A DNA stretch of 58,805 nt from Octopus bimaculoides (taxonomy: Eukaryota), in contig NC_068981.1 in NCBI RefSeq assembly GCF_001194135.2, forward strand, positions 56,404,748 to 56,463,552, read 5' to 3'. Numbering within the stretch: the stretch's first letter is position 1; every line of letters starts with the position of its first letter. A model generated the notes under the pieces. The model saw only the letters and a list, made by a program, of their open reading frames with translations. It was not told the DNA's origin and searched no databases. A program made the position numbers and the translations under genes. Shown here piece by piece: positions 12,740 through 34,884 of this stretch.

Positions 12740-15580
12740 AGATAATTTAAAGAAAGCAATGAGTAAAAAAAAGAAAGAAAAAGATTACCAGAATCAAAAG
12801 ATGTTAATAGAAGGAAGTTACTAGATACTATTTGGAAAGTAGATTCTGTTATCTGTGGGATCGATATTAAAAATATAGGTAACAATAACTTATGCAGGAT
12901 GGTTAGTAGTTACAACCAGAATAAGTATTCCTCAACAAAAGAAAACGAAGGAGCAGATGTGGAAAGGGAGAAAAGAAAATAAAGTGAAGATTTTAAGACA
13001 AGATCTGAGTAGAATAGAAGCCTGGAAACAGAAACAGAATAATTAAATATTCTTTTGAGGAAAAGTACTTAATCAAAAAGAAAGGATTTGAAATAGTCAT
13101 GGAAGAGCTAAAACAACGTATCATAGCAATAGTAAGTAAGCTTTCCAGAAATCAGAAAAGAATTGATCAGTATCAACAGATGAGACTGCTTGAGACAAAT
13201 CAGAGAAGATTTTATTGCCAAATAAATAGTGTAGACGAAACTATTGAGGCTAATGCAGAGGAGGCTAGCAAGTTCTGAAGTGATGTTTGGGATAAGCCAA
13301 TTAACCATAATGGAGATGCAGCGTGACTAAAGAAAGTGAGAGAAGTTAGTGAGAAGCAGCCAGATCTAAAACTAACTAGTGCATTAATGAGTAAAGGGTT
13401 GGGGAAAATGCCGAATTGGAAAGGCCAACGACCAGATTTAGTCCAAGAGTAATGATTAACGAAATTTAGTAGCTTATATGCGAGAGTGAGGGAACAACTT
13501 CAGGATTGCCTGAATGGAGGAGTCGTAACTAATTGGATTACTAGAGAGAAAACCATAGTTTTTATGAAAGATAAAAGCAAAAGAAATATAGCTAGTAATT
13601 ATAGACCAACCACATACTTACTATTGGTGTGGAAGCTGCTAATAGGAATGTTCTCAGAAAACATTTATAAGCACCTTGACAGCTAGAATTTACTTCTAGA
13701 GGCACAGAAAAGATGCATGAAGGAGGCTAGAGAAGCGCGTGGTCTATTATACTTAGACACAGCGGACCTAAAAGAAGTCACATCGAGAAAGAAAAAAATA
13801 ACAATTACAGATTGATTATAATAAATAGATTATAACAAAGTCTATGATATGATCCTACCCTCATGGATAAGTGAATGTCTGAGAAGATTCAGTATTGTAG
13901 ACAACAAAAGAGAGTTAATTAGCTATAACATGAAGAAATGAAAAGTAGATCTCTACTCAGGTAATACAGCCTTAGGCAAAGTTAATATTGAGAGAGGAAT
14001 TTCCAGAGAGACTTGTTATCCTCTTTAATATTTGTGTTTTGTTTAATCTCTCTCATTTTAGTATTAAAATAGATAACGGCAGGGTGTCAGTTCAGAAATA
14101 GTAAAGGAAAAGTTGACCATTTGCTCTACATGGATGACCTGAAGCTTTTTAGTAAGTATAAAAAAATAGATTCCTTATAGATATGGAATTTGGCATAGAC
14201 AAGTACGCAATATTCCTCATAAAAAAAAAGGGACAAGTAGTCAGCAGTGAAAGTATTAAATTACCAGATGGACAGACTTTACTATCCACTGAAAGAGGGA
14301 GGTTATAAGTGTCTTGGAGTATTAAAATCTGAAAGAGTACTAAGTACAGAAATCAGAAGGATGAGGAAGTTAATGAAGGCGAAGTTAAATGGCCTGAATC
14401 TAGTGAAGGCTGTAAAAACTTGGGTAGTGCCGCTACTTAGATATTTAGCAGCTTTTGTAGATTCGACAAAATCTGAATTAGCAAATCAAGACAGAAGAAC
14501 TAGGAGTGAATTCAATATGAATGGAGGACGTCATCCAAGAGCAGGACTAGCAAGACTATATTTACATAGAACGGAAAGTGGTAGAGGTTTGATATCAGTA
14601 GAAGACTGTTAGCTAGAGTAGATATAGCATCCTATGTAGGTAATAATGAGGAAATTTTATTAAGAACCGCAAGAGTAACTATAGGTAATACAGAAGCCAA
14701 AAAGCCAAATGAAGTTAAATACCAGAAAAAAGAGCAAAAGTTACCTGACTGGCAAGAGAAGGTTTTGCATGGCAGATTTGCAAAGATAGTAACAGAAAAT
14801 AGTAATAGTGAGACATGCTGTGGTTGCAGAAAGGAAGCCTGAAAAGAGAGACGGAAAGTTTGCTAGTAGCAGGACAAGATCAGGCATTGAGAATTAATTG
14901 GATAAAAGCCAGGATAGACAACAATCAGGTATATTCCCAATCTAGGTTACGTAAATCAAAGGGGGGAAATATTACTCATATAGTTTGTAAATATTGTAGG
15001 CCGGCACAGAAAGAATACAAGAAAAGACATGACAACTTCGGGAAAATAATCGACTGTGAGTTATGTAGAAAGTTAGGATTTGACCATACTGACCATGAGT
15101 ACGAACCTAGTAGAGTACTAGAAAGTAAGAAATATAAGATGTTGTGGGACTTTAACATTCAAACTGATAGAGTAATAAAAGCTAGAAGGCCTGATTTAGT
15201 AGTAGAAGATAAATAGAATAGAAAGTGCTAGATAATTGACTTTACAGTCCGAAATGAAGAAAGAATCAATATGAGAGGTATAGAGAAAATATAAAATTAC
15301 CAGAACTTAGCCATTGAGTCTCAGAAGCTATGAAAAGTGCGGATAAAATGTATCCCTTTAGTTATAGGTGCAGTAGGAACAATTCCTAAAGATTTGAATA
15401 GATAGAGGAAGTAAGCATAAAACCTAGTTTAGTACAGCTCCAGAAAACAGTGTTATTAGGGACATCTAGGATACTTTGGAAGGTCCTTGATATCTAAGGT
15501 TACTTGTAACCTGATGTTAGTTTTTCTTTTCTAACAGTCTAATATGTTGTCCGTATATGAAGAGAAAATAATAGTAATAA
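12740..15580 (+). mobile_element. Long degraded R4/Dong-type non-LTR retrotransposon (RT + RLE)
   Basis: ASNYRPTT, HLLYMDDLK (ccatttgctctacatggatgacctgaag), KAVKTWVVP, RLYLHRTESGRGLISVEDC, LKRETESLLVAGQDQAL, LWDFNIQTD..ARRPDLVV. Confidence 0.9.
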
Positions 15581-16800: not shown

Positions 16801-16946
16801 TCGGTCAAACTAAAGTGTCTGACCCGAGCAAAAAACTAATTAAAAATTAGTGTAATAGGTGTAAAACAACTTGCTATAAACGAATACGAAAAAAATGCGC
16901 GTTCGCGTAGGGGGAGGGAGAGGACTCAGAAAATTCACATCGTCAG
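16801..16946. repeat. Dispersed repeat, inverted partner of 22136-22282
   Basis: ~146 bp matching the reverse complement of 22136-22282 at roughly 85-90% by eye. Confidence 0.9.
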
Positions 16947-17772: not shown

Positions 17773-18461
17773 ATACGGAGACACAGACACCAGAATAAGC
17801 ATATAAATGCGAAACAAGGTGGAAAAAATAATACTCGAATACCAGAAGTAGAGTAATATGCTTTATTAAAATGCATCAAAAATATCACAAAACCTGTTAC
17901 TCAGAGTTTTACGTTCCCGTTATTCAGATAGTTTTATGAGGAGCTTTGCTAAAAACCCAGCAGGATTAGAAACAAGACCTGTTGAAAGGTCAGATGAACC
18001 TAGTGCAGGCTCAACGGCTATCTAGTAATAGCACGGATACGTAGAAATTTCGGAATGGCGTCCGGCGTGCTGAAAGACCACTGGATTGTGGCAACCCTCA
18101 GCTTCTATTGAAGCGTGTCTCTAGGAGAAGGTCACTTTGATATAAGAGCAGATATGCAGGGAATAGCATTGGACATTTTGGGGATTTTTGGTTTGTGCTA
18201 GAGATCATGTCGCTCCCACATGCCTGAGCTTGCGATTGATATCAGCACCAAACATCTTGCTCCGGCTTGTCTCTGGATAATGTCAATAAAGTGGACAGGG
18301 TCTATGAGGTGTTATGCCAGCCGTATTGGGCCTCAAACTCTGTACAGGCATTGCCGACCTCTGCTTGATATGTGCGTTTTTTGATTTTTTTCTTGCCTAT
18401 ATATATTTATTTTATTTTTAGTATATATATTTATATATTTTTAGTACATTTCTTTTTATAC

Positions 18462-21400
18462 GGAAGTCCTGTGGCGATAGGAAGGTGATAAAGCATGCAG
18501 ACTGACGGGTTTGAAACATGTAGTCAGCGACCTGCACGCAGGCGGCCCATGCTAGATATAAAGTCGTCTCCTTGTCACCCAAGACAGCGGTAGGATTCGG
18601 TTGCTGCATGGGTGTCTCGGCGTGGTTGCGGCGTCGGTTGCGGAGCGGCGGCGGTAACCTGTTCGGCTCGGCACGCGCAAGCTCGGCGGTGGAACGCCGT
18701 CACGTCCNNNNNNNNNNNNNNNNNNNNNNNNNNNNNNNNNNNNNNNNNNNNNNNNNNNNNNNNNNNNNNNNNNNNNNNNNNNNNNNNNNNNNNNNNNNNN
18801 NNNNNNNNNNNNNNNNNNNNNNNNNNNNNNNNNNNNNNNNNNNNNNNNNNNNNNNNNNNNNNNNNNNNNNNNNNNNNNNNNNNNNNNNNNNNNNNNNNNN
18901 NNNNNNNNNNNNNNNNNNNNNNNNNNNNNNNNNNNNNNNNNNNNNNNNNNNNNNNNNNNNNNNNNNNNNNNNNNNNNNNNNNNNNNNNNNNNNNNNNNNN
19001 NNNNNNNNNNNNNNNNNNNNNNNNNNNNNNNNNNNNNNNNNNNNNNNNNNNNNNNNNNNNNNNNNNNNNNNNNNNNNNNNNNNNNNNNNNNNNNNNNNNN
19101 NNNNNNNNNNNNNNNNNNNNNNNNNNNNNNNNNNNNNNNNNNNNNNNNNNNNNNNNNNNNNNNNNNNNNNNNNNNNNNNNNNNNNNNNNNNNNNNNNNNN
19201 NNNNNNNNNNNNNNNNNNNNNNNNNNNNNNNNNNNNNNNNNNNNNNNNNNNNNNNNNNNNNNNNNNNNNNNNNNNNNNNNNNNNNNNNNNNNNNNNNNNN
19301 NNNNNNNNNNNNNNNNNNNNNNNNNNNNNNNNNNNNNNNNNNNNNNNNNNNNNNNNNNNNNNNNNNNNNNNNNNNNNNNNNNNNNNNNNNNNNNNNNNNN
19401 NNNNNNNNNNNNNNNNNNNNNNNNNNNNNNNNNNNNNNNNNNNNNNNNNNNNNNNNNNNNNNNNNNNNNNNNNNNNNNNNNNNNNNNNNNNNNNNNNNNN
19501 NNNNNNNNNNNNNNNNNNNNNNNNNNNNNNNNNNNNNNNNNNNNNNNNNNNNNNNNNNNNNNNNNNNNNNNNNNNNNNNNNNNGATGCCCAATCCTTATG
19601 CCCGCTATGGAGCTTTTCTACAGGGGAAGGCTCTCCACTCCTGGCCTTGAGGTGGATCACTCCGACTACTCGTCCTCCTCCAAGATGGATAACGATCCTA
19701 TTTTGCGACCGTTCTCCGGGCAGGAGGTGAAAATTAGTCGGAGATAAATGAATCCTTCCTCAGCGGCGGGTCCTGATGGACTTAGCGTTCGTGAGGTTAA
19801 GTCCATGGACCCCTGTATCCTCGCCAACGTGTGTAACTGCATGTTGCTGGCCAGAAAGGTTCCCGATATCCTGAAGCGAGGAAAGTCCGTCCTGATACCT
19901 AATAGGGCGGACGATCCTATGGATATCACCAATTGGCGACCACTGACGATATGTTCTGCGGTGTATCGTCTCTTTTCGAAAATGCTCGCCAAGAGGATGC
20001 TTCAGACAACTCCCCTAAATCCTGCATAACGCGGATTTATCCGGGCTGACAGCTGCAGTGAGAACTCTTTTCTCATGCGGCAGTTGATCAACCGAGCGAT
20101 GAGGAGGCCAGCATGGCTGAGAATACCACGTCTGGAGGTGGCTTTCATGCATCTCACCAAGGTCTTCGATAAGTCACACACTCGTTAGTGTATGTGGGAC
20201 TGCGAATGCTTGGCTACCACGAGTACGTTATAGCGCTCGTGGAGGGGATCTATTAAAGTAGCACTACCAGATTCTCAGTCGGTGGGCAACTTAGCGAGCC
20301 CATCGAGATTCGGCGTGGTGTTAAACAAGGGGACGCGCTCTCACCAATCCTCTTTAACATTGCGACCGACCCGCTTTTAGATGTTCTGTCGGACAGCAGA
20401 GGTCTCAGTATTGAGGGGATCAGAATAGCAGGACTCGCGTACGCTGACGATTTGGTCCTAGTCGCAGGGTCGCACGACAGTCTCCAGGCTCTTATGGATA
20501 GATGCCTGGAATTCTATCGCGCAGTCGGGCTAGGAATCGACATCGGTAAGTATGCGTGGTTCTTCATTCGTGGCTGGGACAAGTCCTATCTTGTCAACGA
20601 TAGCACTCCGCCGAGTCTCGATGGCATCGAGATGAAAAAGCTAGAACTGAGAGAGGTGTCCTACCTAGGACTTAATGTTCGTGTATGAACTTCGAGCACA
20701 AATCTGGAATTTTGTTTAGATTCGGTGGAGCAGGTGTCCCTGAATATCGATAAGATTTGCAGGGCTCCACTGAAACCCCGATAGTTTAAGCAGTATTATT
20801 TGCCGAGACTATTTCATAGTCTCACGCAGATGCTGTCAAGAGGAATTCTCGAGAGACTTGACACGGTCATCCATGTAGGAGCTAGGCGGATTCTTCATCT
20901 CCCGTATACCACTTCTACCTTTTTATATAGCAGCCGGCGTGATGGCGGGTTAAGTCTTCACCAGATGGGTGAGGCTGATCCCCAAATGTGTCATCTGCCG
21001 TAATCTACGCCTTCTGACGTCGGGATACGCCTCCGTGAAAAAGATTGCTGATTCTGCAGGATTAGCCGAACAGAATCAGCAATTAGTAGCTTCCTTCGAT
21101 TTGCTGTTGCTCCCAGCTGACGCTACCAAATACGACCCTGACATCCCGCTGGTGCATTCCCATAAATGCACGGGGGCGTGTGCGGCGGCGTTTCGTGTGG
21201 ATGCGATTGGCAATAGTTGGATCAGTAGACCGGGTGGGATTACGAAGTGCTTCTTGAATTTACTCAAGATGCGCTCCGACATATTTCCCTCCCGAGAGAC
21301 CTTGACACGTGGTGACCGAGGGGACTCCACTTGTCCAAGGTATAAAATAGGGACGGAGACAATATCTCACGTCAGTGGAGTTTGCGACGCTCTTAAAGGG

Positions 21401-22037
21401 CCACGACTTGCCAGACACAACAAAATCTGTAATCTGGTAGCGAAAGAAGCTGCCAACTATGACTGGAGTATCAGTGTGGAGCCTTCGTACATTGTGGGAG
21501 GCTCCAGGCTGATACTCGACTTAGTCTTTAATCTTCCTAAGAAAGTAGTAGTAGTAGTAGTCGATGTGACCGTTCGGTTGGAGCAGGGAGAAGCCTTGAG
21601 AGAGGCATCTTTTGAGAAAGTGCACAAGTTTCGACCGCTCATGCCATTGTTTTTGCAAGAGTTTGATCGGTTGGTAGAAGGGCATGGATTCCCAGTCGGT
21701 GCCTGTGGTGCCTGGTGCCGGCCTGCGAGTGGGGCGCTAGATGCCTTGGGCATTAAGGACAGGTCATTCCGACGACTACTCAGCAGGACGGCTCTCAGCA
21801 TGGGGAGCTTGCGAGCAGGATCCCTGTATGATGACTAGGAGTAACTAAAATAAAATGACAATAATACCGGATTGACAAAATAGGTGGTTCACATGTTCCC
21901 TTGGCGGGTCAGTGGGAGTCGCTCCAGGAATGACTTTTTTGTAGTGCCTGCGTTCGTGCGTGTCACTAATGATGGGGCATGAGTGGGATCACCTATTATA
22001 ATCAAAGGGAAAGAATTGGCAAAGTCAATATTCGCAA
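18462..22037 (+). mobile_element. R2-clade site-specific non-LTR retrotransposon (RT + CCHC + restriction-like endonuclease), degraded, ~3.6 kb including an 876-nt gap
   Basis: SAAGPDG, NWRPLTICS, GVKQGDALSPILFN, AYADDL (YADD at 20440-20451), RRDGGL, ETISHVSGVC..RHNKIC, (P>L)DLV..VVDVTV, EKVHKF, GFPVGACGAW; ORF ends at 21838; ~200-nt 3'UTR followed immediately by TAGCCAAATGCC. The 5' boundary is approximate (GC-content shift). Confidence 0.9.
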
Positions 22038-22053
22038 TAGCCAAATGCCCCGT
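22038..22053 (+). other. 28S rDNA R2 target-site remnant (downstream half)
   Basis: tagccaaatgccccgt vs canonical 28S TAGCCAAATGCCTCGT (15/16); the match stops there and flanks are not rDNA. Confidence 0.8.
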
Positions 22054-22059
22054 TTATTG

Positions 22060-22282
22060 TACACCTATTACACTATTTTTTCCTTTTCTTTTTTTTTTTG
22101 GCTCGGGTCAAACACTAGAGTTTAAAGGTCATTGCCTGACGATGTGAATTTTTTGAGTCCTCTCCCCCACCCCCGTTCGCGAGCATTTTTTTTCATATTT
22201 GTTTACAGCAAGTTGTTTTACACCTATTACACTAATTTTTAATTATTTTTATGCTCGGGTCAAACACTTTAGTTTGACCGAT
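22060..22282. repeat. Dispersed repeat with internal duplicated subunit and terminal hairpin
   Basis: Two copies of tacacctattacacta...gctcgggtcaaacact; ends in hairpin ggtcaaac-acttta-gtttgacc followed by a T-run. Confidence 0.8.
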
Positions 22283-22639
22283 TTTTCTTTAGAGATTCAG
22301 TGTCATTTGAAAAAAAACATCATGAAAAGAAAAAGGAGCTCTTCATAGAAGCCAACAAACCCGAATACAATCCATTTTTTTCATACGTAACAAATTATTA
22401 CAAGGACTACCATTAAGAAAAAATCACTTGGCGCATGCAGACATCTCACCGATTTCCATTGATACAGGAATTCGGTAATGAAGAACTGAAAAATGTTGAC
22501 GTCATATTCATTATTCTTTTTTGCTTTACATTGTAGTTCATGGAAACTTGGTCGAACCAATAACTGTCACCAAGTCAGTCAAGTCGATATATTCATTATT
22601 TATCATAGAACTTTTTAGTTCAATACCTGGTTGTAGGGA

Positions 22640-31369: not shown

Positions 31370-32140
31370 GAACAAGGTATGGATATAAAATTGGTGACAA
31401 GAAAATAAGTCATCTATTTTATATAGATAACTTAAAACTCTATGGCAAAGACAATAATGAGTTTGAAGGTCTACTACATACTGTGAAAACATTCAGAGAT
31501 GACATCGAGATGGAATTTGGTCTTGATAAATGTGCAAAGGCCACTTTCCACAAAGGGAAATTGAAGACCTCACATTCATTGTTGTTGGATGTTGACATAG
31601 TCATAAAAGAACTCGAGCAAGAACAAACTTACAAATATCTCGGAATGAATGAAGGCTCTGGTAGTCATGTTACAAGCATGAAAGACAATATCAGGAAGGA
31701 ATGTTACAGGAGAGTTCGAGCAGTCATAAAATGCGAGTTAAATGTACGTAACAAGGTGTTAGTTATATATTCCTTAGCAGATCCGGTTGTTATTTACAGT
31801 TTCAATGTGTTGAACTGGAGTATAAGTAAAATAAGGAAGATTGTCTGGAAAATTGGTAAGCTGCTGACATTGCTGATTGCAATGAGATGCACCACCCAAA
31901 GGCAGACGCAGTTCGTCTTTACCTGTCCAGGGCTCAATGAGGTCGAGGCTTGATCCAGTTTGAAATCTGCTACAAAGCCACCACAAATGGACTGGCAAAA
32001 TATCTTGAAACATCTAAAAACTGGATGCTAAAGCGTGTTGAAAGCCATGAAAAACGCAAGAAGCTTCATTCTCTTGTGAAGGAGAGCAAAAAAAATTCAA
32101 GTGAGTTTATGCATAATACCCAGGTTGAACAGTGTGACTG
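31370..32140 (+). mobile_element. R4/Dong-type RT fragment
   Basis: GYKIGDKKISHLFYIDNLKLY, FRDDIEMEFGLDKCAK, TYKYLGMNE. Confidence 0.9.
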
Positions 32141-33714: not shown

Positions 33715-34884
33715 AAATCTCGCGTGCAATCGCAGTAGTTCGGTGTGGCGCTGGAATCCTGAAGTGGACAGAGGATGATCTAAAGGAGATAGACAGGAAG
33801 TCAAGAAAACTTCTAACGATGCATGGTGCCAATCATCCACGTTTGGGCACAGATCGCCTACACCTGACGAGAGCAAATGGAGGAAGAGGACTGATAAGTG
33901 TGAAAGACTGCGTGCGTATCGAACTCGTGAGCTTAATGAGATGTCTAGCTCAAAGTAAGGAAACCTTGCTAGTGATAGTTATGAACGAGGGAGTATTGAA
34001 AGTATGAAAAAAAGCAAAACAAAGGAAGAAGTACAAAAAAGACATGAAGAATTACGCAATAAGGGATTACACAATCAATTCCATTTACCCACAACAGAAG
34101 TTGCTGGAAAAATAGGTGGGATTGGCTGATGAAAGGAATCCTAAAAGAAGAGACCGAAAGCACCATACTAGTAGCGCAAGACCGAGCTTTGGCCACGAAC
34201 TGGAGGGTCAACCTTAGGAATGAGCAAGTGTTTCCGCTATGTCATATCTGCAATAGAGTGGATGAAACCATTGCCCATATCACAAACGAATGCCCTAGGC
34301 TTGCCCCAAACCACGACAAGTTGTGGTGACACGACCAGGTAGCGAAAGTGCTACAGTGGAAACTGTGCGAAAAGTTGGGGCTAGAGAGAGCAAGATGTGG
34401 TATGAGAACAAACCGCAGAGAGTGGCAGAGTAGGAGACTAGTAAAATCAGATCAGGTGCTAGAGCATAACAGACCAGACCTAAGTGGTGGTGGACAAGGT
34501 GCACCACATATGCTATATAGTTGATGTTGCATGTCCCTTTGACCCACGAATAGTCAAGAAGGAAGACGAAAAGATAGATAGATACAATCATCTTAAGTAT
34601 GAAATAGCCCGGATATGGGAAATGAAGAAGGTGAAGATAGTGCCAATTACGGTTGTGTCCTTGGGAACAGCATCAGAAGGCATCAAGGGGGATATAAAGG
34701 AAATTGGAATAGAGTGTCCAGTAGAACTGTTACAAAAGGTTTGCCTCCTTGGCATGGCCAGAATAATCAGAAAAATATTAGATAGCTTAAAAGAACGAAT
34801 AGCATGATACTGTAGGCTGCAGGTAGTAAGCCAGCTATGTATGTAAGACTTCAGGATCTCCAACAAAACCTGTGACAAAGAGAA

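What the first reader, a model, noticed from the sequence alone, without database searches (positions are those of the whole stretch)
18462..22053. R2-type retrotransposon outside rDNA that retains the 28S target sequence at its 3' junction
Seen: a single RT-CCHC-RLE reading frame (now with stops and frameshifts) with R2-like motifs (RHNKIC, VVDVTV, EKV, GFPVGAxGxW). Its ~200-nt 3'UTR is followed immediately by TAGCCAAATGCC(C)CGT, then unrelated repeat DNA. I see no upstream 28S half-site (GACTCTCTTAAGG) and no other rRNA sequence nearby. Established: R2 elements insert at the 28S site TTAAGG/TAGCCAAATGCCTCGT and are co-transcribed with rRNA. Inference: either an rDNA-resident cephalopod R2 lineage retrotransposed ectopically and copied ~16 nt of read-through 28S RNA, or its endonuclease cut an off-target mimic of the downstream half-site. 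Either would indicate an R2 family with relaxed specificity. At ~3.6 kb (gap length as assembled) the copy could be near full length.
Basis: partly seen in the sequence, partly recalled or inferred. Interest (0 to 1): 0.78.

Follow-up and report, generated by a model that had tools for sequence, protein, structure and literature searches.

The report
Dead R2 copy with 28S tag
This is an old, broken copy of the ribosomal-gene-specific jumping element R2 that landed once outside the ribosomal genes and kept a 16-letter piece of 28S rRNA sequence at its tail; this is a known kind of accident, not evidence that the family has loosened its target choice.

Summary
The core observation holds. Window 19584-21838 (+) is a decayed R2-clade reading frame (RT, CCHC, RLE) with 5 in-frame stops and 2 frameshifts. 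A 199-nt 3'UTR follows, then TAGCCAAATGCCCCGT (22038-22053), a 15/16 match to the 28S sequence just 3' of the canonical R2 site. No rRNA is detected anywhere in the window.

Three parts of the finding do not hold.
- The sequence left of the gap (about 18480-18707) is a repeat at 100-400 times single-copy depth, whereas the R2 body is single copy. The start at 18462 and "near full length" are therefore unsupported. The R2 continues at least 418 nt into the gap and is probably 5'-truncated.
- The junction is not a sign of ongoing relaxed specificity. It is real (an independent contig spans it) and old (orthologous contigs in several related species).
- At least two paralogs share the same tag at the same point in the same flanking repeat. 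That points to one event followed by DNA duplication. Across all copies the tag consensus is 16/16 to 28S.

Best reading: one ectopic target-primed reverse transcription of a 28S-R2 read-through transcript. Ectopic R1 insertions are documented with up to 14 nt of 28S in the same way. Capture of a DNA fragment from an R2-occupied rDNA unit is not excluded. A separate multi-copy R2 relative exists in the genome, but I could not test whether it lies in rDNA.

The parts
19584..21838 (+). Decayed R2-clade ORF (RT, linker, CCHC, RLE). It has 5 in-frame stops and a 1-nt deletion near 20171 and a 1-nt insertion near 20967, both relative to paralogs. It is cut off at the gap on its 5' side.
   Evidence: Translation and stitching. 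PDB R2 proteins match at E 1.6e-91. BLASTP to the 28S-resident R2 protein P0003 gives 31% identity over aa 420-1163.
19925..20679 (+). Reverse-transcriptase domain. Motif A aspartate is lost (FMHLTKVFD, 20141-20170). YADD is retained (AYADD, 20437-20451).
   Evidence: Pfam RVT_1 E 7e-19, aa 114-366 of the stitched protein. Motif coordinates. Paralogs read ...DLAKAFD at the motif A position (loose ends).
21332..21385 (+). CCHC zinc knuckle, with the second Cys mutated to Tyr (CPRYKIGTETISHVSGVC).
   Evidence: Aligns to CRNCTASYESLSHILGQC of R2 protein 9nl2. Coordinates.
21512..21631 (+). Restriction-like endonuclease core: (P>L)D at ILDLVF, D in VVDVTV, K in EKVHKF.
   Evidence: Second aligned stretch with R2 protein 9nl2, i-Evalue 1.4e-26. 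Coordinates.
21839..22037 (+). R2 3'UTR (199 nt), ending ...AATATTCGCAA.
   Evidence: Read directly from the sequence. Single-copy depth. Paralog B differs at 13 of 97 positions in 21930-22026.
22038..22053 (+). 28S-derived tag TAGCCAAATGCCCCGT, a 15/16 match to the 28S sequence 3' of the R2 site. The consensus over paralogs is 16/16.
   Evidence: not chance. Position 22050 is T in paralogs B and C and in most copies in other species. Paralog C reads TAGCCAAATGCCTCAT. An independent contig spans 22011-22111 with 0 differences.
22054..22135 (+). Partial copy of a ~150-nt high-copy SINE/MITE-like repeat, entered about halfway along the unit. This is the target DNA of the insertion.
   Evidence: Alignment to the family copies begins at 22054. 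Word depth is hundreds to thousands. Family members read ...CATATTCGTTTA(C/A)..CA.G before TT(A/G)TTGTACACC, with no 16-mer.
22136..22281 (+). Full copy of the same repeat family. Another copy lies at 16801-16946 on the minus strand.
   Evidence: Self-BLAST, 88.7% identity over 150 nt.
18708..19583 (.). Assembly gap. The R2 continues at least 418 nt into it from the right, and the left-hand repeat continues at least 88 nt into it from the left. The R2 5' end lies inside the gap.
   Evidence: Contigs of 1093-1130 nt in X1, X3, X4 and X6 run 395-418 nt beyond 19584. Their last 30 nt before 19584 are CAGTAGTACTTGGCGAGGATGCGGAGCAGG. An X4 contig runs 88 nt beyond 18707.
18480..18707 (.). Not part of the R2: a member of a different, very abundant repeat family.
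   Evidence: Word depth is 1,500-32,000 against 12-70 for single-copy DNA. At 18577, 7-9 contigs per run carry the family's G. No Rfam match even at E<=1. No copy elsewhere in the window.

Best explanation
This is a dead and ancient copy of an R2-clade non-LTR retrotransposon lying outside the rDNA. It is probably 5'-truncated, and by similarity it is closest to the three-zinc-finger 'A' lineage.

Its 3' end carries 16 nt copied from the 28S rRNA sequence that normally lies just downstream of an R2 insertion. The most likely history (inferred) has three steps.
1. An R2 resident in a 28S gene was transcribed as part of the rRNA co-transcript, and its RNA kept a short 28S tail.
2. On one occasion, reverse transcription was primed at a nick in a copy of a ~150-nt dispersed repeat instead of at the 28S site. 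Priming started on the tail about 16 nt past the R2 end, with at most 1-2 nt of pairing. The tail was therefore copied into the genome together with the R2.
3. The insertion was later duplicated at the DNA level together with its flank, giving at least two paralogs. It decayed and was inherited by several related species.

It has no present function and shows no sign of transcription.

Shown: R2 identity, the 28S origin of the tag, the non-rDNA context, a real junction, orthology in related species, and paralogs sharing one junction. Inferred: RNA read-through rather than DNA capture, and 5' truncation.
For: R2 identity:
- PDB R2 proteins 9nl2, 9nl3 and 9dou match at E 1.6e-91 to 2.2e-88, and R2Bm at 1.8e-55, all across RT, CCHC and RLE. 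L1 ORF2 reaches only 1e-12.
- The nearest database proteins are about 31-33% identical. Ten of 11 of their contigs continue into TAGCCAAATGCC(TCGTCATC) right after the element. L001 is flanked by LSU rRNA on both sides.

The tag is real and came from 28S:
- It is unique in the window, with 0 matches in 100 shuffles. P is about 1e-8 at a fixed position.
- It starts exactly where 28S starts in the relatives.
- The consensus across copies is 16/16.

The locus is not rDNA: no rRNA match in 58.8 kb.

The junction is not a misassembly: an X3 contig spans 22011-22111 with 0 differences at single-copy depth.

The insertion is ancient and orthologous:
- An X20 contig of 3032 nt covers 21690-22420 across the UTR, tag, repeat and unique flank.
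- An X15 contig covers 21815-22174, and an X14 contig covers 22004-22277.

One event: paralogs B and C carry the same UTR end, the same tag and the same entry point into the repeat.

The tag came in with the R2 and was not already in the target. Intact repeat-family members have unrelated sequence (...TTCGTTTACTGCAAG) where the locus has the 16-mer, and homology begins at 22054. No contig shows the 16-mer without the R2.

Precedent:
- Ectopic R1 insertions carry up to 14 nt of downstream 28S. This was interpreted as 28S sequence on the transcript's 3' end. Non-rDNA R2 copies occur in five Drosophila species (PMC2718515).
- That paper's reference list includes Luan & Eickbush 1996 on downstream 28S sequence on the R2 RNA template.

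Decay: 5 stops, 2 locus-specific indels, RT motif A Asp lost and CCHC Cys lost. Indexed RNA runs hold 0.00-0.01 of the locus words.
Against: - The 5' junction is hidden in the gap. Neither 5' truncation nor the upstream half of the target repeat, which the model predicts, has been seen.
- Nothing here distinguishes an RNA-copied tail from a DNA fragment of an R2-occupied rDNA unit broken 16 nt into 28S.
- I could not show that this family, or any R2, currently sits in this organism's 28S genes. The multi-copy relative has an unseen 3' junction, and its 3'UTR is not alignable to this one at 80%.
- No empty site was found in any of the species sampled.
- The ancestral 13th base (T or C) is inferred by parsimony only. 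The lineage of this locus has C in all species.
Confidence: 0.55

Rival explanations
1. DNA-level capture. A piece of an R2-occupied rDNA unit (a partial R2 plus the first 16 bp of downstream 28S) was excised or copied as DNA and joined into a break inside the dispersed repeat, for example by end joining. No reverse transcription took place at this site.
For: - Non-rDNA R2 copies that are 'frequently incomplete' are known (PMC2718515).
- The junction between tag and repeat shows at most 1-2 nt of overlap, which is also typical of end joining.
- Later history at this locus was clearly DNA-level, since the paralogs share the flank.
Against: - A random break in an rDNA unit would rarely fall within 16 bp of the R2 3' end. 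Short 28S tails are exactly what read-through RNA predicts, and they have been seen for R1 (up to 14 nt).
- No other 28S sequence lies anywhere near.
Confidence: 0.25
2. Off-target cleavage. The R2 endonuclease cut a pre-existing genomic mimic of the downstream half-site, so the 16-mer is target DNA rather than copied RNA.
For: - A given 16-mer is expected about once by chance in a genome of a few Gb (my arithmetic), and 12-mers hundreds of times.
- Some repeat-family variants read ...ATAGCAAGTTG, a faint resemblance to TAGCCAAATG.
Against: - Intact family members do not contain the 16-mer. Homology to the family starts only at 22054.
- No contig shows the 16-mer without an R2 attached.
- No upstream half-site is seen.
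- The model would need a 5'-truncated repeat copy to abut a chance 16/16 mimic.
Confidence: 0.08
3. One reading: this marks an R2 family with relaxed target specificity that inserts repeatedly outside rDNA.
For: - Non-target-specific R2 families exist (R2NS-1_SMed and R2NS-1_CSi; PMC5035012).
- Several single-copy paralogs of the R2 body exist in this genome, and more in organism E.
Against: - All copies that retain this 3'UTR share one junction and one flank.
- The copies are old: about 87% identity between paralogs, and orthologous across species.
- No young copies with unrelated flanks were seen.
Confidence: 0.05
4. Artefact: misassembly or a chance 16-mer.
For: The scaffold is full of gaps (8 N runs). 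Short-read unitigs break around 22026-22040.
Against: - The breaks are explained by paralogs sharing 21997-22040.
- An independent run has a contig across the junction with 0 differences.
- Four other species show the same junction.
- Chance P is about 1e-8.
Confidence: 0.01

Closest known systems
Canonical 28S-resident R2 elements. By score the closest are the vertebrate 'A-clade' R2 proteins with solved structures (PDB 9nl2, 9nl3 and 9dou/R2Tg; an A-clade structures paper is PMC12180492).
   Same: Single ORF with RT, CCHC knuckle and C-terminal restriction-like endonuclease. The 3'UTR abuts TAGCCAAATGCC... at the exact canonical position.
   Different: This copy is not in a 28S gene. Only 16 nt of 28S follow it, it is degenerate, and its N-terminal DNA-binding region and 5' ribozyme are unseen because of the gap. 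Identity to any known R2 protein is only about 31-33%.
Ectopic (non-28S) R1 insertions and non-rDNA R2 copies in Drosophila (Stage & Eickbush 2009, PMC2718515).
   Same: An rDNA-specific non-LTR element lies outside rDNA, often in repeated DNA. A few nucleotides of downstream 28S (up to 14 for R1) are carried at the 3' junction, attributed to 28S sequence on the transcript's 3' end.
   Different: In that paper the 28S tail was documented for R1, not R2. Those R2 copies were young (1-2% diverged). This one is ancient, duplicated and shared between species.
[quoted passage not shown] 2016, PMC5035012).
   Same: R2-clade elements found away from 28S genes. R2 has been reported in Mollusca.
   Different: R2NS families have many young copies with unrelated flanks and no 28S tag. 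Here there is a single junction, with a 28S tag, multiplied by duplication.
Fish R2 lineages with 28S-like sequence inside the 3'UTR (PMC5035012).
   Same: 28S-derived sequence is associated with the R2 3' end.
   Different: In those lineages the 28S-like stretch is an internal, diverged part of the UTR of elements still inserted in 28S. Here it is a terminal tag, exact in consensus, followed by non-rDNA.

Membership tests
R2 clade of non-LTR retrotransposons | R2-type reverse transcriptase | tested here: met
   Pfam RVT_1 E 7e-19. Best PDB matches are R2 proteins at E 1.6e-91, against 1e-12 for L1 ORF2. NWRPLT, GVKQGD and YADD motifs are present. No formal phylogeny against R4/NeSL/Hero/Utopia was possible because no reference sequences were on hand.
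R2 clade of non-LTR retrotransposons | C-terminal CCHC knuckle followed by a PD-(D/E)XK restriction-like endonuclease | tested here: met
   Aligned to 9nl2 residues 883-1093, i-Evalue 1.4e-26. The motifs are degenerate: C..Y..H..C, LD for PD, with VVDVTV and EKVHKF kept.
R2 clade of non-LTR retrotransposons | N-terminal zinc finger(s) and Myb DNA-binding region | not testable with these tools
   The query starts at residue ~420 of P0003 and ~320-375 of the PDB R2 proteins. That part lies in the gap or is absent.
R2 clade of non-LTR retrotransposons | Insertion at the conserved 28S site ...TTAAGG/TAGCCAAATGCCTCGT... | tested here: not met
   This copy has no rRNA around it and keeps only the first 16 nt of the downstream half-site. 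Its nearest relatives do meet the criterion, in 10 of 11 contigs. So it is a displaced member by descent, not by location.
R2 clade of non-LTR retrotransposons | 5' HDV-like self-cleaving ribozyme | tested here: inconclusive
   No Rfam match at E<=1 in 17900-22400. However, the true 5' end is in the gap, and the sequence left of the gap is another repeat.
Non-target-specific R2 (R2NS-type) family | Multiple similar copies whose 3' ends abut unrelated sequences | tested here: not met
   All contigs matching 21985-22056 at >=80-85% identity, in 5 runs of organism A and 4 runs of related species, carry the same tag and the same flank. The one exception is an X20 contig that breaks off inside the UTR at 22030.
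Read-through-tagged ectopic insertion (as described for R1 in PMC2718515) | An intact element 3' end followed by a short stretch of the downstream rDNA target, then non-rDNA | tested here: met
   UTR end, then 16 nt of 28S, then repeat. An RNA origin for the tag is inferred, not shown.

The most novel reading that the evidence does not exclude
The 16-nt tag may record the natural 3' end of this lineage's R2 transcript, meaning a defined processing point about 16 nt into 28S. In that case the copies sharing R2, tag and part of the flank would have multiplied by retrotransposition from an ectopic master with 3' transduction rather than by DNA duplication. That would be an R2 lineage that was, for a time, mobile outside rDNA.
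Probability: 0.06. Interest if true: 0.6.

Novelty: new member of a known kind. Interest (0 to 1): 0.27.

Why it matters
The locus adds a natural example, in an R2 lineage only about 31-33% identical to any described R2 protein, of an rDNA-specific element caught outside rDNA with a piece of its co-transcript's 28S tail. That is modest independent support for the view that R2 templates carry downstream 28S sequence. This is relevant to how R2-based gene-insertion templates are designed. It also gives a dated molecular fossil shared by several species. It does not show relaxed target specificity, and the copy is inert. The more useful lead is the multi-copy R2 relative, whose copy number varies between individuals and which may be the living rDNA-resident element of this organism.

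Tried and rejected
- I tried to lay this organism's reads on the 28S stretch that flanks a relative's R2 (L001:6542-6690), to see what occupies the R2 site in its rDNA. I did not look for another route, so rDNA occupancy is untested.
- Exact-protein look-ups of two window ORFs, meant to recover contigs reaching into the gap, found nothing.
- A second protein search with a neighbouring LINE ORF, meant to identify the host taxon, returned only unnamed metagenome proteins. 'Cephalopod' therefore remains unverified. The only hint is a weak hit to a cuttlefish protein (P0116).
- Rfam scans for rRNA or HDV-like ribozymes found nothing.
- I considered that the repeat homology might extend upstream into the tag and UTR end (TATTCG / AATATTCG). 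Shuffle tests gave 1084/3000, 484/3000 and 69/3000, so I treated it as chance.
- I considered that CGT at the end of the tag belongs to the repeat. Better-matching family members align only from 22054, so at most 1-2 nt overlap.
- I considered a later SINE insertion into a longer 28S fragment. I rejected it because no 28S follows the repeats.
- No supplementary tables were held for the 2025 R2 survey, so I could not check whether cephalopod R2s are already catalogued.
Full report
**What is in the sequence**

On the + strand, 19584-21838 translates into a single R2-like polyprotein remnant that needs two frame changes. It has five in-frame stops at 19745, 20027, 20254, 20686 and 20782. The stitched 753-aa product matches Pfam RVT_1 (E 7e-19).

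Among solved structures, the best matches are R2 retrotransposon proteins 9nl2, 9nl3 and 9dou/R2Tg, at E 1.6e-91 to 2.2e-88. Two stretches align, covering the RT/thumb region and the CCHC plus restriction-like endonuclease region. Bombyx R2 scores 1.8e-55 and L1 ORF2 only about 1e-12.

The copy is clearly dead:
- the RT motif A aspartate is lost (FMHLTKVFD where paralogs read ...DLAKAFD);
- the second Cys of the CCHC knuckle is Tyr;
- the PD of the nuclease is LD.

Relative to paralogous copies in the same genome, this copy lacks one base after 20171 and has one extra base at 20967. Both frameshifts are therefore private mutations of this copy.

The stop codon (21836-21838) is followed by a 199-nt 3'UTR, and at 22038-22053 by TAGCCAAATGCCCCGT. 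This matches 15 of 16 bases of the 28S sequence immediately 3' of the canonical R2 insertion point. It is the only such match in the window, with none in 100 shuffles. At a fixed position its chance probability is about 1e-8. Rfam finds no rRNA anywhere in the 58.8-kb window, and nothing at E<=1 in 17900-22400. There is no upstream half-site.

**The gap**

The scan's note asked that the gap be tested first. Public short-read assemblies of the same organism (names are coded) show that the two sides of the gap are different things.
- The R2 body sits at single-copy word depth: 12.4, 65, 72 and 19.6 in four runs.
- 17960-18707 sits at depths of thousands, 100-400 times single copy, with many variant contigs.

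The apparent common reading frame across the gap only reflects the arbitrary gap length of 876 = 3 x 292.

Contigs of about 1.1 kb extend the R2 395-418 nt leftwards into the gap. A contig from the left side extends 88 nt rightwards. The window's frame begins at residue ~420 of the 28S-resident relative P0003 and at residues ~320-375 of the solved R2 proteins. A full-length copy would therefore need roughly 1.0-1.5 kb upstream of 19584. If the gap estimate is right, at most about 790 nt are available. The copy is thus probably 5'-truncated and lacks the zinc-finger/Myb region and the 5' ribozyme, but this depends on an estimated gap length. 'Near full length' is not supported.

**Is it really R2?**

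Database proteins are only about 31-33% identical, so this is a poorly sampled lineage. I fetched contigs for six of the nearest relatives.
- Ten of eleven contigs, covering five of the six proteins, run from the element's 3' end straight into TAGCCAAATGCC(TCGTCATC...). The eleventh ends before reaching the element's 3' end.
- One contig is flanked on both sides by eukaryotic LSU rRNA.

No reference sequences for R4/Dong, NeSL, Hero or Utopia were available, so a formal phylogeny was not built. The placement rests on similarity and on the insertion site of the relatives.

**The 3' junction**

The junction is not an assembly artefact. In an independent run, a contig spans 22011-22111 with no differences at single-copy depth. 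The unitig breaks at 22026 and 22040 that first looked suspicious are explained by paralogs that share 21997-22040 exactly.

At least two further copies exist in this genome, each at single-copy depth, and both carry the same arrangement.
- Paralog C reads ...TAGCCAAATGCC TCATTTGTTGTACATCTATTACACTAATTT.
- Paralog B differs from this locus at 13 of 97 UTR positions. After position 22055 it continues GTTGTACAACTATCAGAC....

All three copies therefore have the same UTR end, the same tag, and the same entry point into the same downstream repeat.

Related species (coded B to E) have contigs that cross the UTR, tag, repeat and unique flank:
- a 3032-nt contig covering 21690-22420 in X20;
- 21815-22174 in X15;
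- 22004-22277 in X14.

The insertion and its duplications therefore predate the divergence of these species.

Position 13 of the tag (22050) is C only in the lineage of this locus. It is T in paralogs B and C and in most copies in the other species. The G-to-A change in paralog C is a CpG-type change. The consensus, and probably the ancestral tag, is TAGCCAAATGCCTCGT, a 16/16 match to 28S.

**The target**

From 22054 the sequence aligns to a ~150-nt dispersed repeat. A full copy lies at 22136-22281, and another at 16801-16946 on the minus strand. Its word depth is in the hundreds to thousands. Intact members of that family read ...CATATTCGTTTA(C/A)..CA.G immediately before TT(A/G)TTGTACACC. 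They do not contain the 16-mer.

No contig was found in which the 16-mer occurs without the R2. This argues that the 16 nt arrived with the R2 and were not a pre-existing mimic of the target. Overlap between tag and target is at most 1-2 nt. A faint similarity between the UTR end (AATATTCG) and the repeat is at chance level.

**Mechanism**

The best-supported reading is a single ectopic target-primed reverse transcription. The template was an R2 RNA that retained a short read-through tail of 28S, and it was primed at a nick in the dispersed repeat.

This is a known behaviour of rDNA-specific elements. Stage and Eickbush (PMC2718515) found non-rDNA R2 copies in five Drosophila species. They also found ectopic R1 insertions carrying up to 14 nt of downstream 28S, and concluded that the transcript's 3' end often contains flanking 28S. 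Their reference list includes Luan and Eickbush 1996, on downstream 28S sequence on the R2 RNA template.

The main rival is capture of a DNA fragment of an R2-bearing rDNA unit that happened to break 16 bp into 28S. That would be an unlikely break position, but nothing here excludes it, because the 5' junction is hidden in the gap.

The evidence is for one old event multiplied by duplication, unlike the R2NS families, which have many young copies and unrelated flanks (PMC5035012).

**Other R2 in this genome**

At 80% likeness, the R2 body picks up several single-copy paralogs with various internal deletions. It also picks up one high-depth relative, at about 30, 20 and 11 times single-copy depth in three individuals. 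That relative matches only conserved patches (20158-20382, 20593-20624, 20978-21109, 21318-21551) and does not match the 3'UTR.

Multi-copy status with copy number varying between individuals is what an rDNA-resident R2 would look like. Its junctions were not seen. Indexed RNA assemblies of the organism hold essentially none of the locus's words.

**Verdict**

The thing itself is an inert, ancient, displaced R2 pseudogene with a 28S read-through tag. It is a new example of a known kind of event, in a little-sampled R2 lineage. R2 is already reported from Mollusca (PMC5035012; PMC12247875). Whether it is catalogued in this particular taxon could not be checked. Interest is modest.

Noticed in passing
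window 20158-20382, 20593-20624, 20978-21109, 21318-21551 (as matched by reads): A separate R2 relative is present at about 30x, 20x and 11x single-copy depth in three individuals. It is at least 80% alike only in conserved patches and is not alignable in the 3'UTR. It may be the living, rDNA-resident R2 of this organism.
   Followed up: partly
window 17960-18707: Very abundant repeat family (word depth 100-400x single copy) directly left of the gap. Its 5' boundary is near 18480-18500. It has no Rfam match and no second copy in the window.
   Followed up: partly
window 22136-22281 (+), 16801-16946 (-), partial copy 22054-22135: A SINE/MITE-like repeat of about 150 nt with an internal hairpin (GGTCAAAC...GTTTGACC). 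It is present at thousands-fold depth in this and related species.
   Followed up: partly
window 14247-15216 (+), 31483-31953 (+), ~33800-34007 (+): Remnants of another LINE family with 'ARRPDLVV' and 'GRGLISV(E/K)DC' motifs. The relatives are unnamed metagenome and genome proteins, some carrying Pfam zf-RVT.
   Followed up: partly
window 21792-21793: Several paralogs, in this species and in organisms B and E, carry 32-33 extra nucleotides here (e.g. ATGCTACACACATAAAATATGCTTAGAAGTTA). Either this copy has a deletion near the ORF end or the others share an insertion.
   Followed up: no
window 21930-22026: The paralog B contig (13 differences) is seen in runs X3, X4, X6 and X8 but not in X1. This could be a presence/absence polymorphism or a coverage effect.
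   Followed up: no
window 22026-22033: The UTR-terminal 8-mer AATATTCG also occurs in the flanking repeat family's consensus, about 11 nt upstream of the joining point. A shuffle test gave 69/3000 against the read-derived consensus, but 484/3000 and 1084/3000 against the window's own copies.
   Followed up: yes
runs X18 and X20 laid on window 21975-22062: Run X18 is labelled organism B, but its contigs at this locus match those of X20 (organism E) rather than X14 (organism B). This may be a labelling or taxonomy issue in the public records.
   Followed up: no
whole window: There are eight N gaps (209, 237, 876, 100, 661, 344, 795 and 10 nt). Most are bordered by TA/CA-type microsatellites, and overall GC is about 30-37%.
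   Followed up: no
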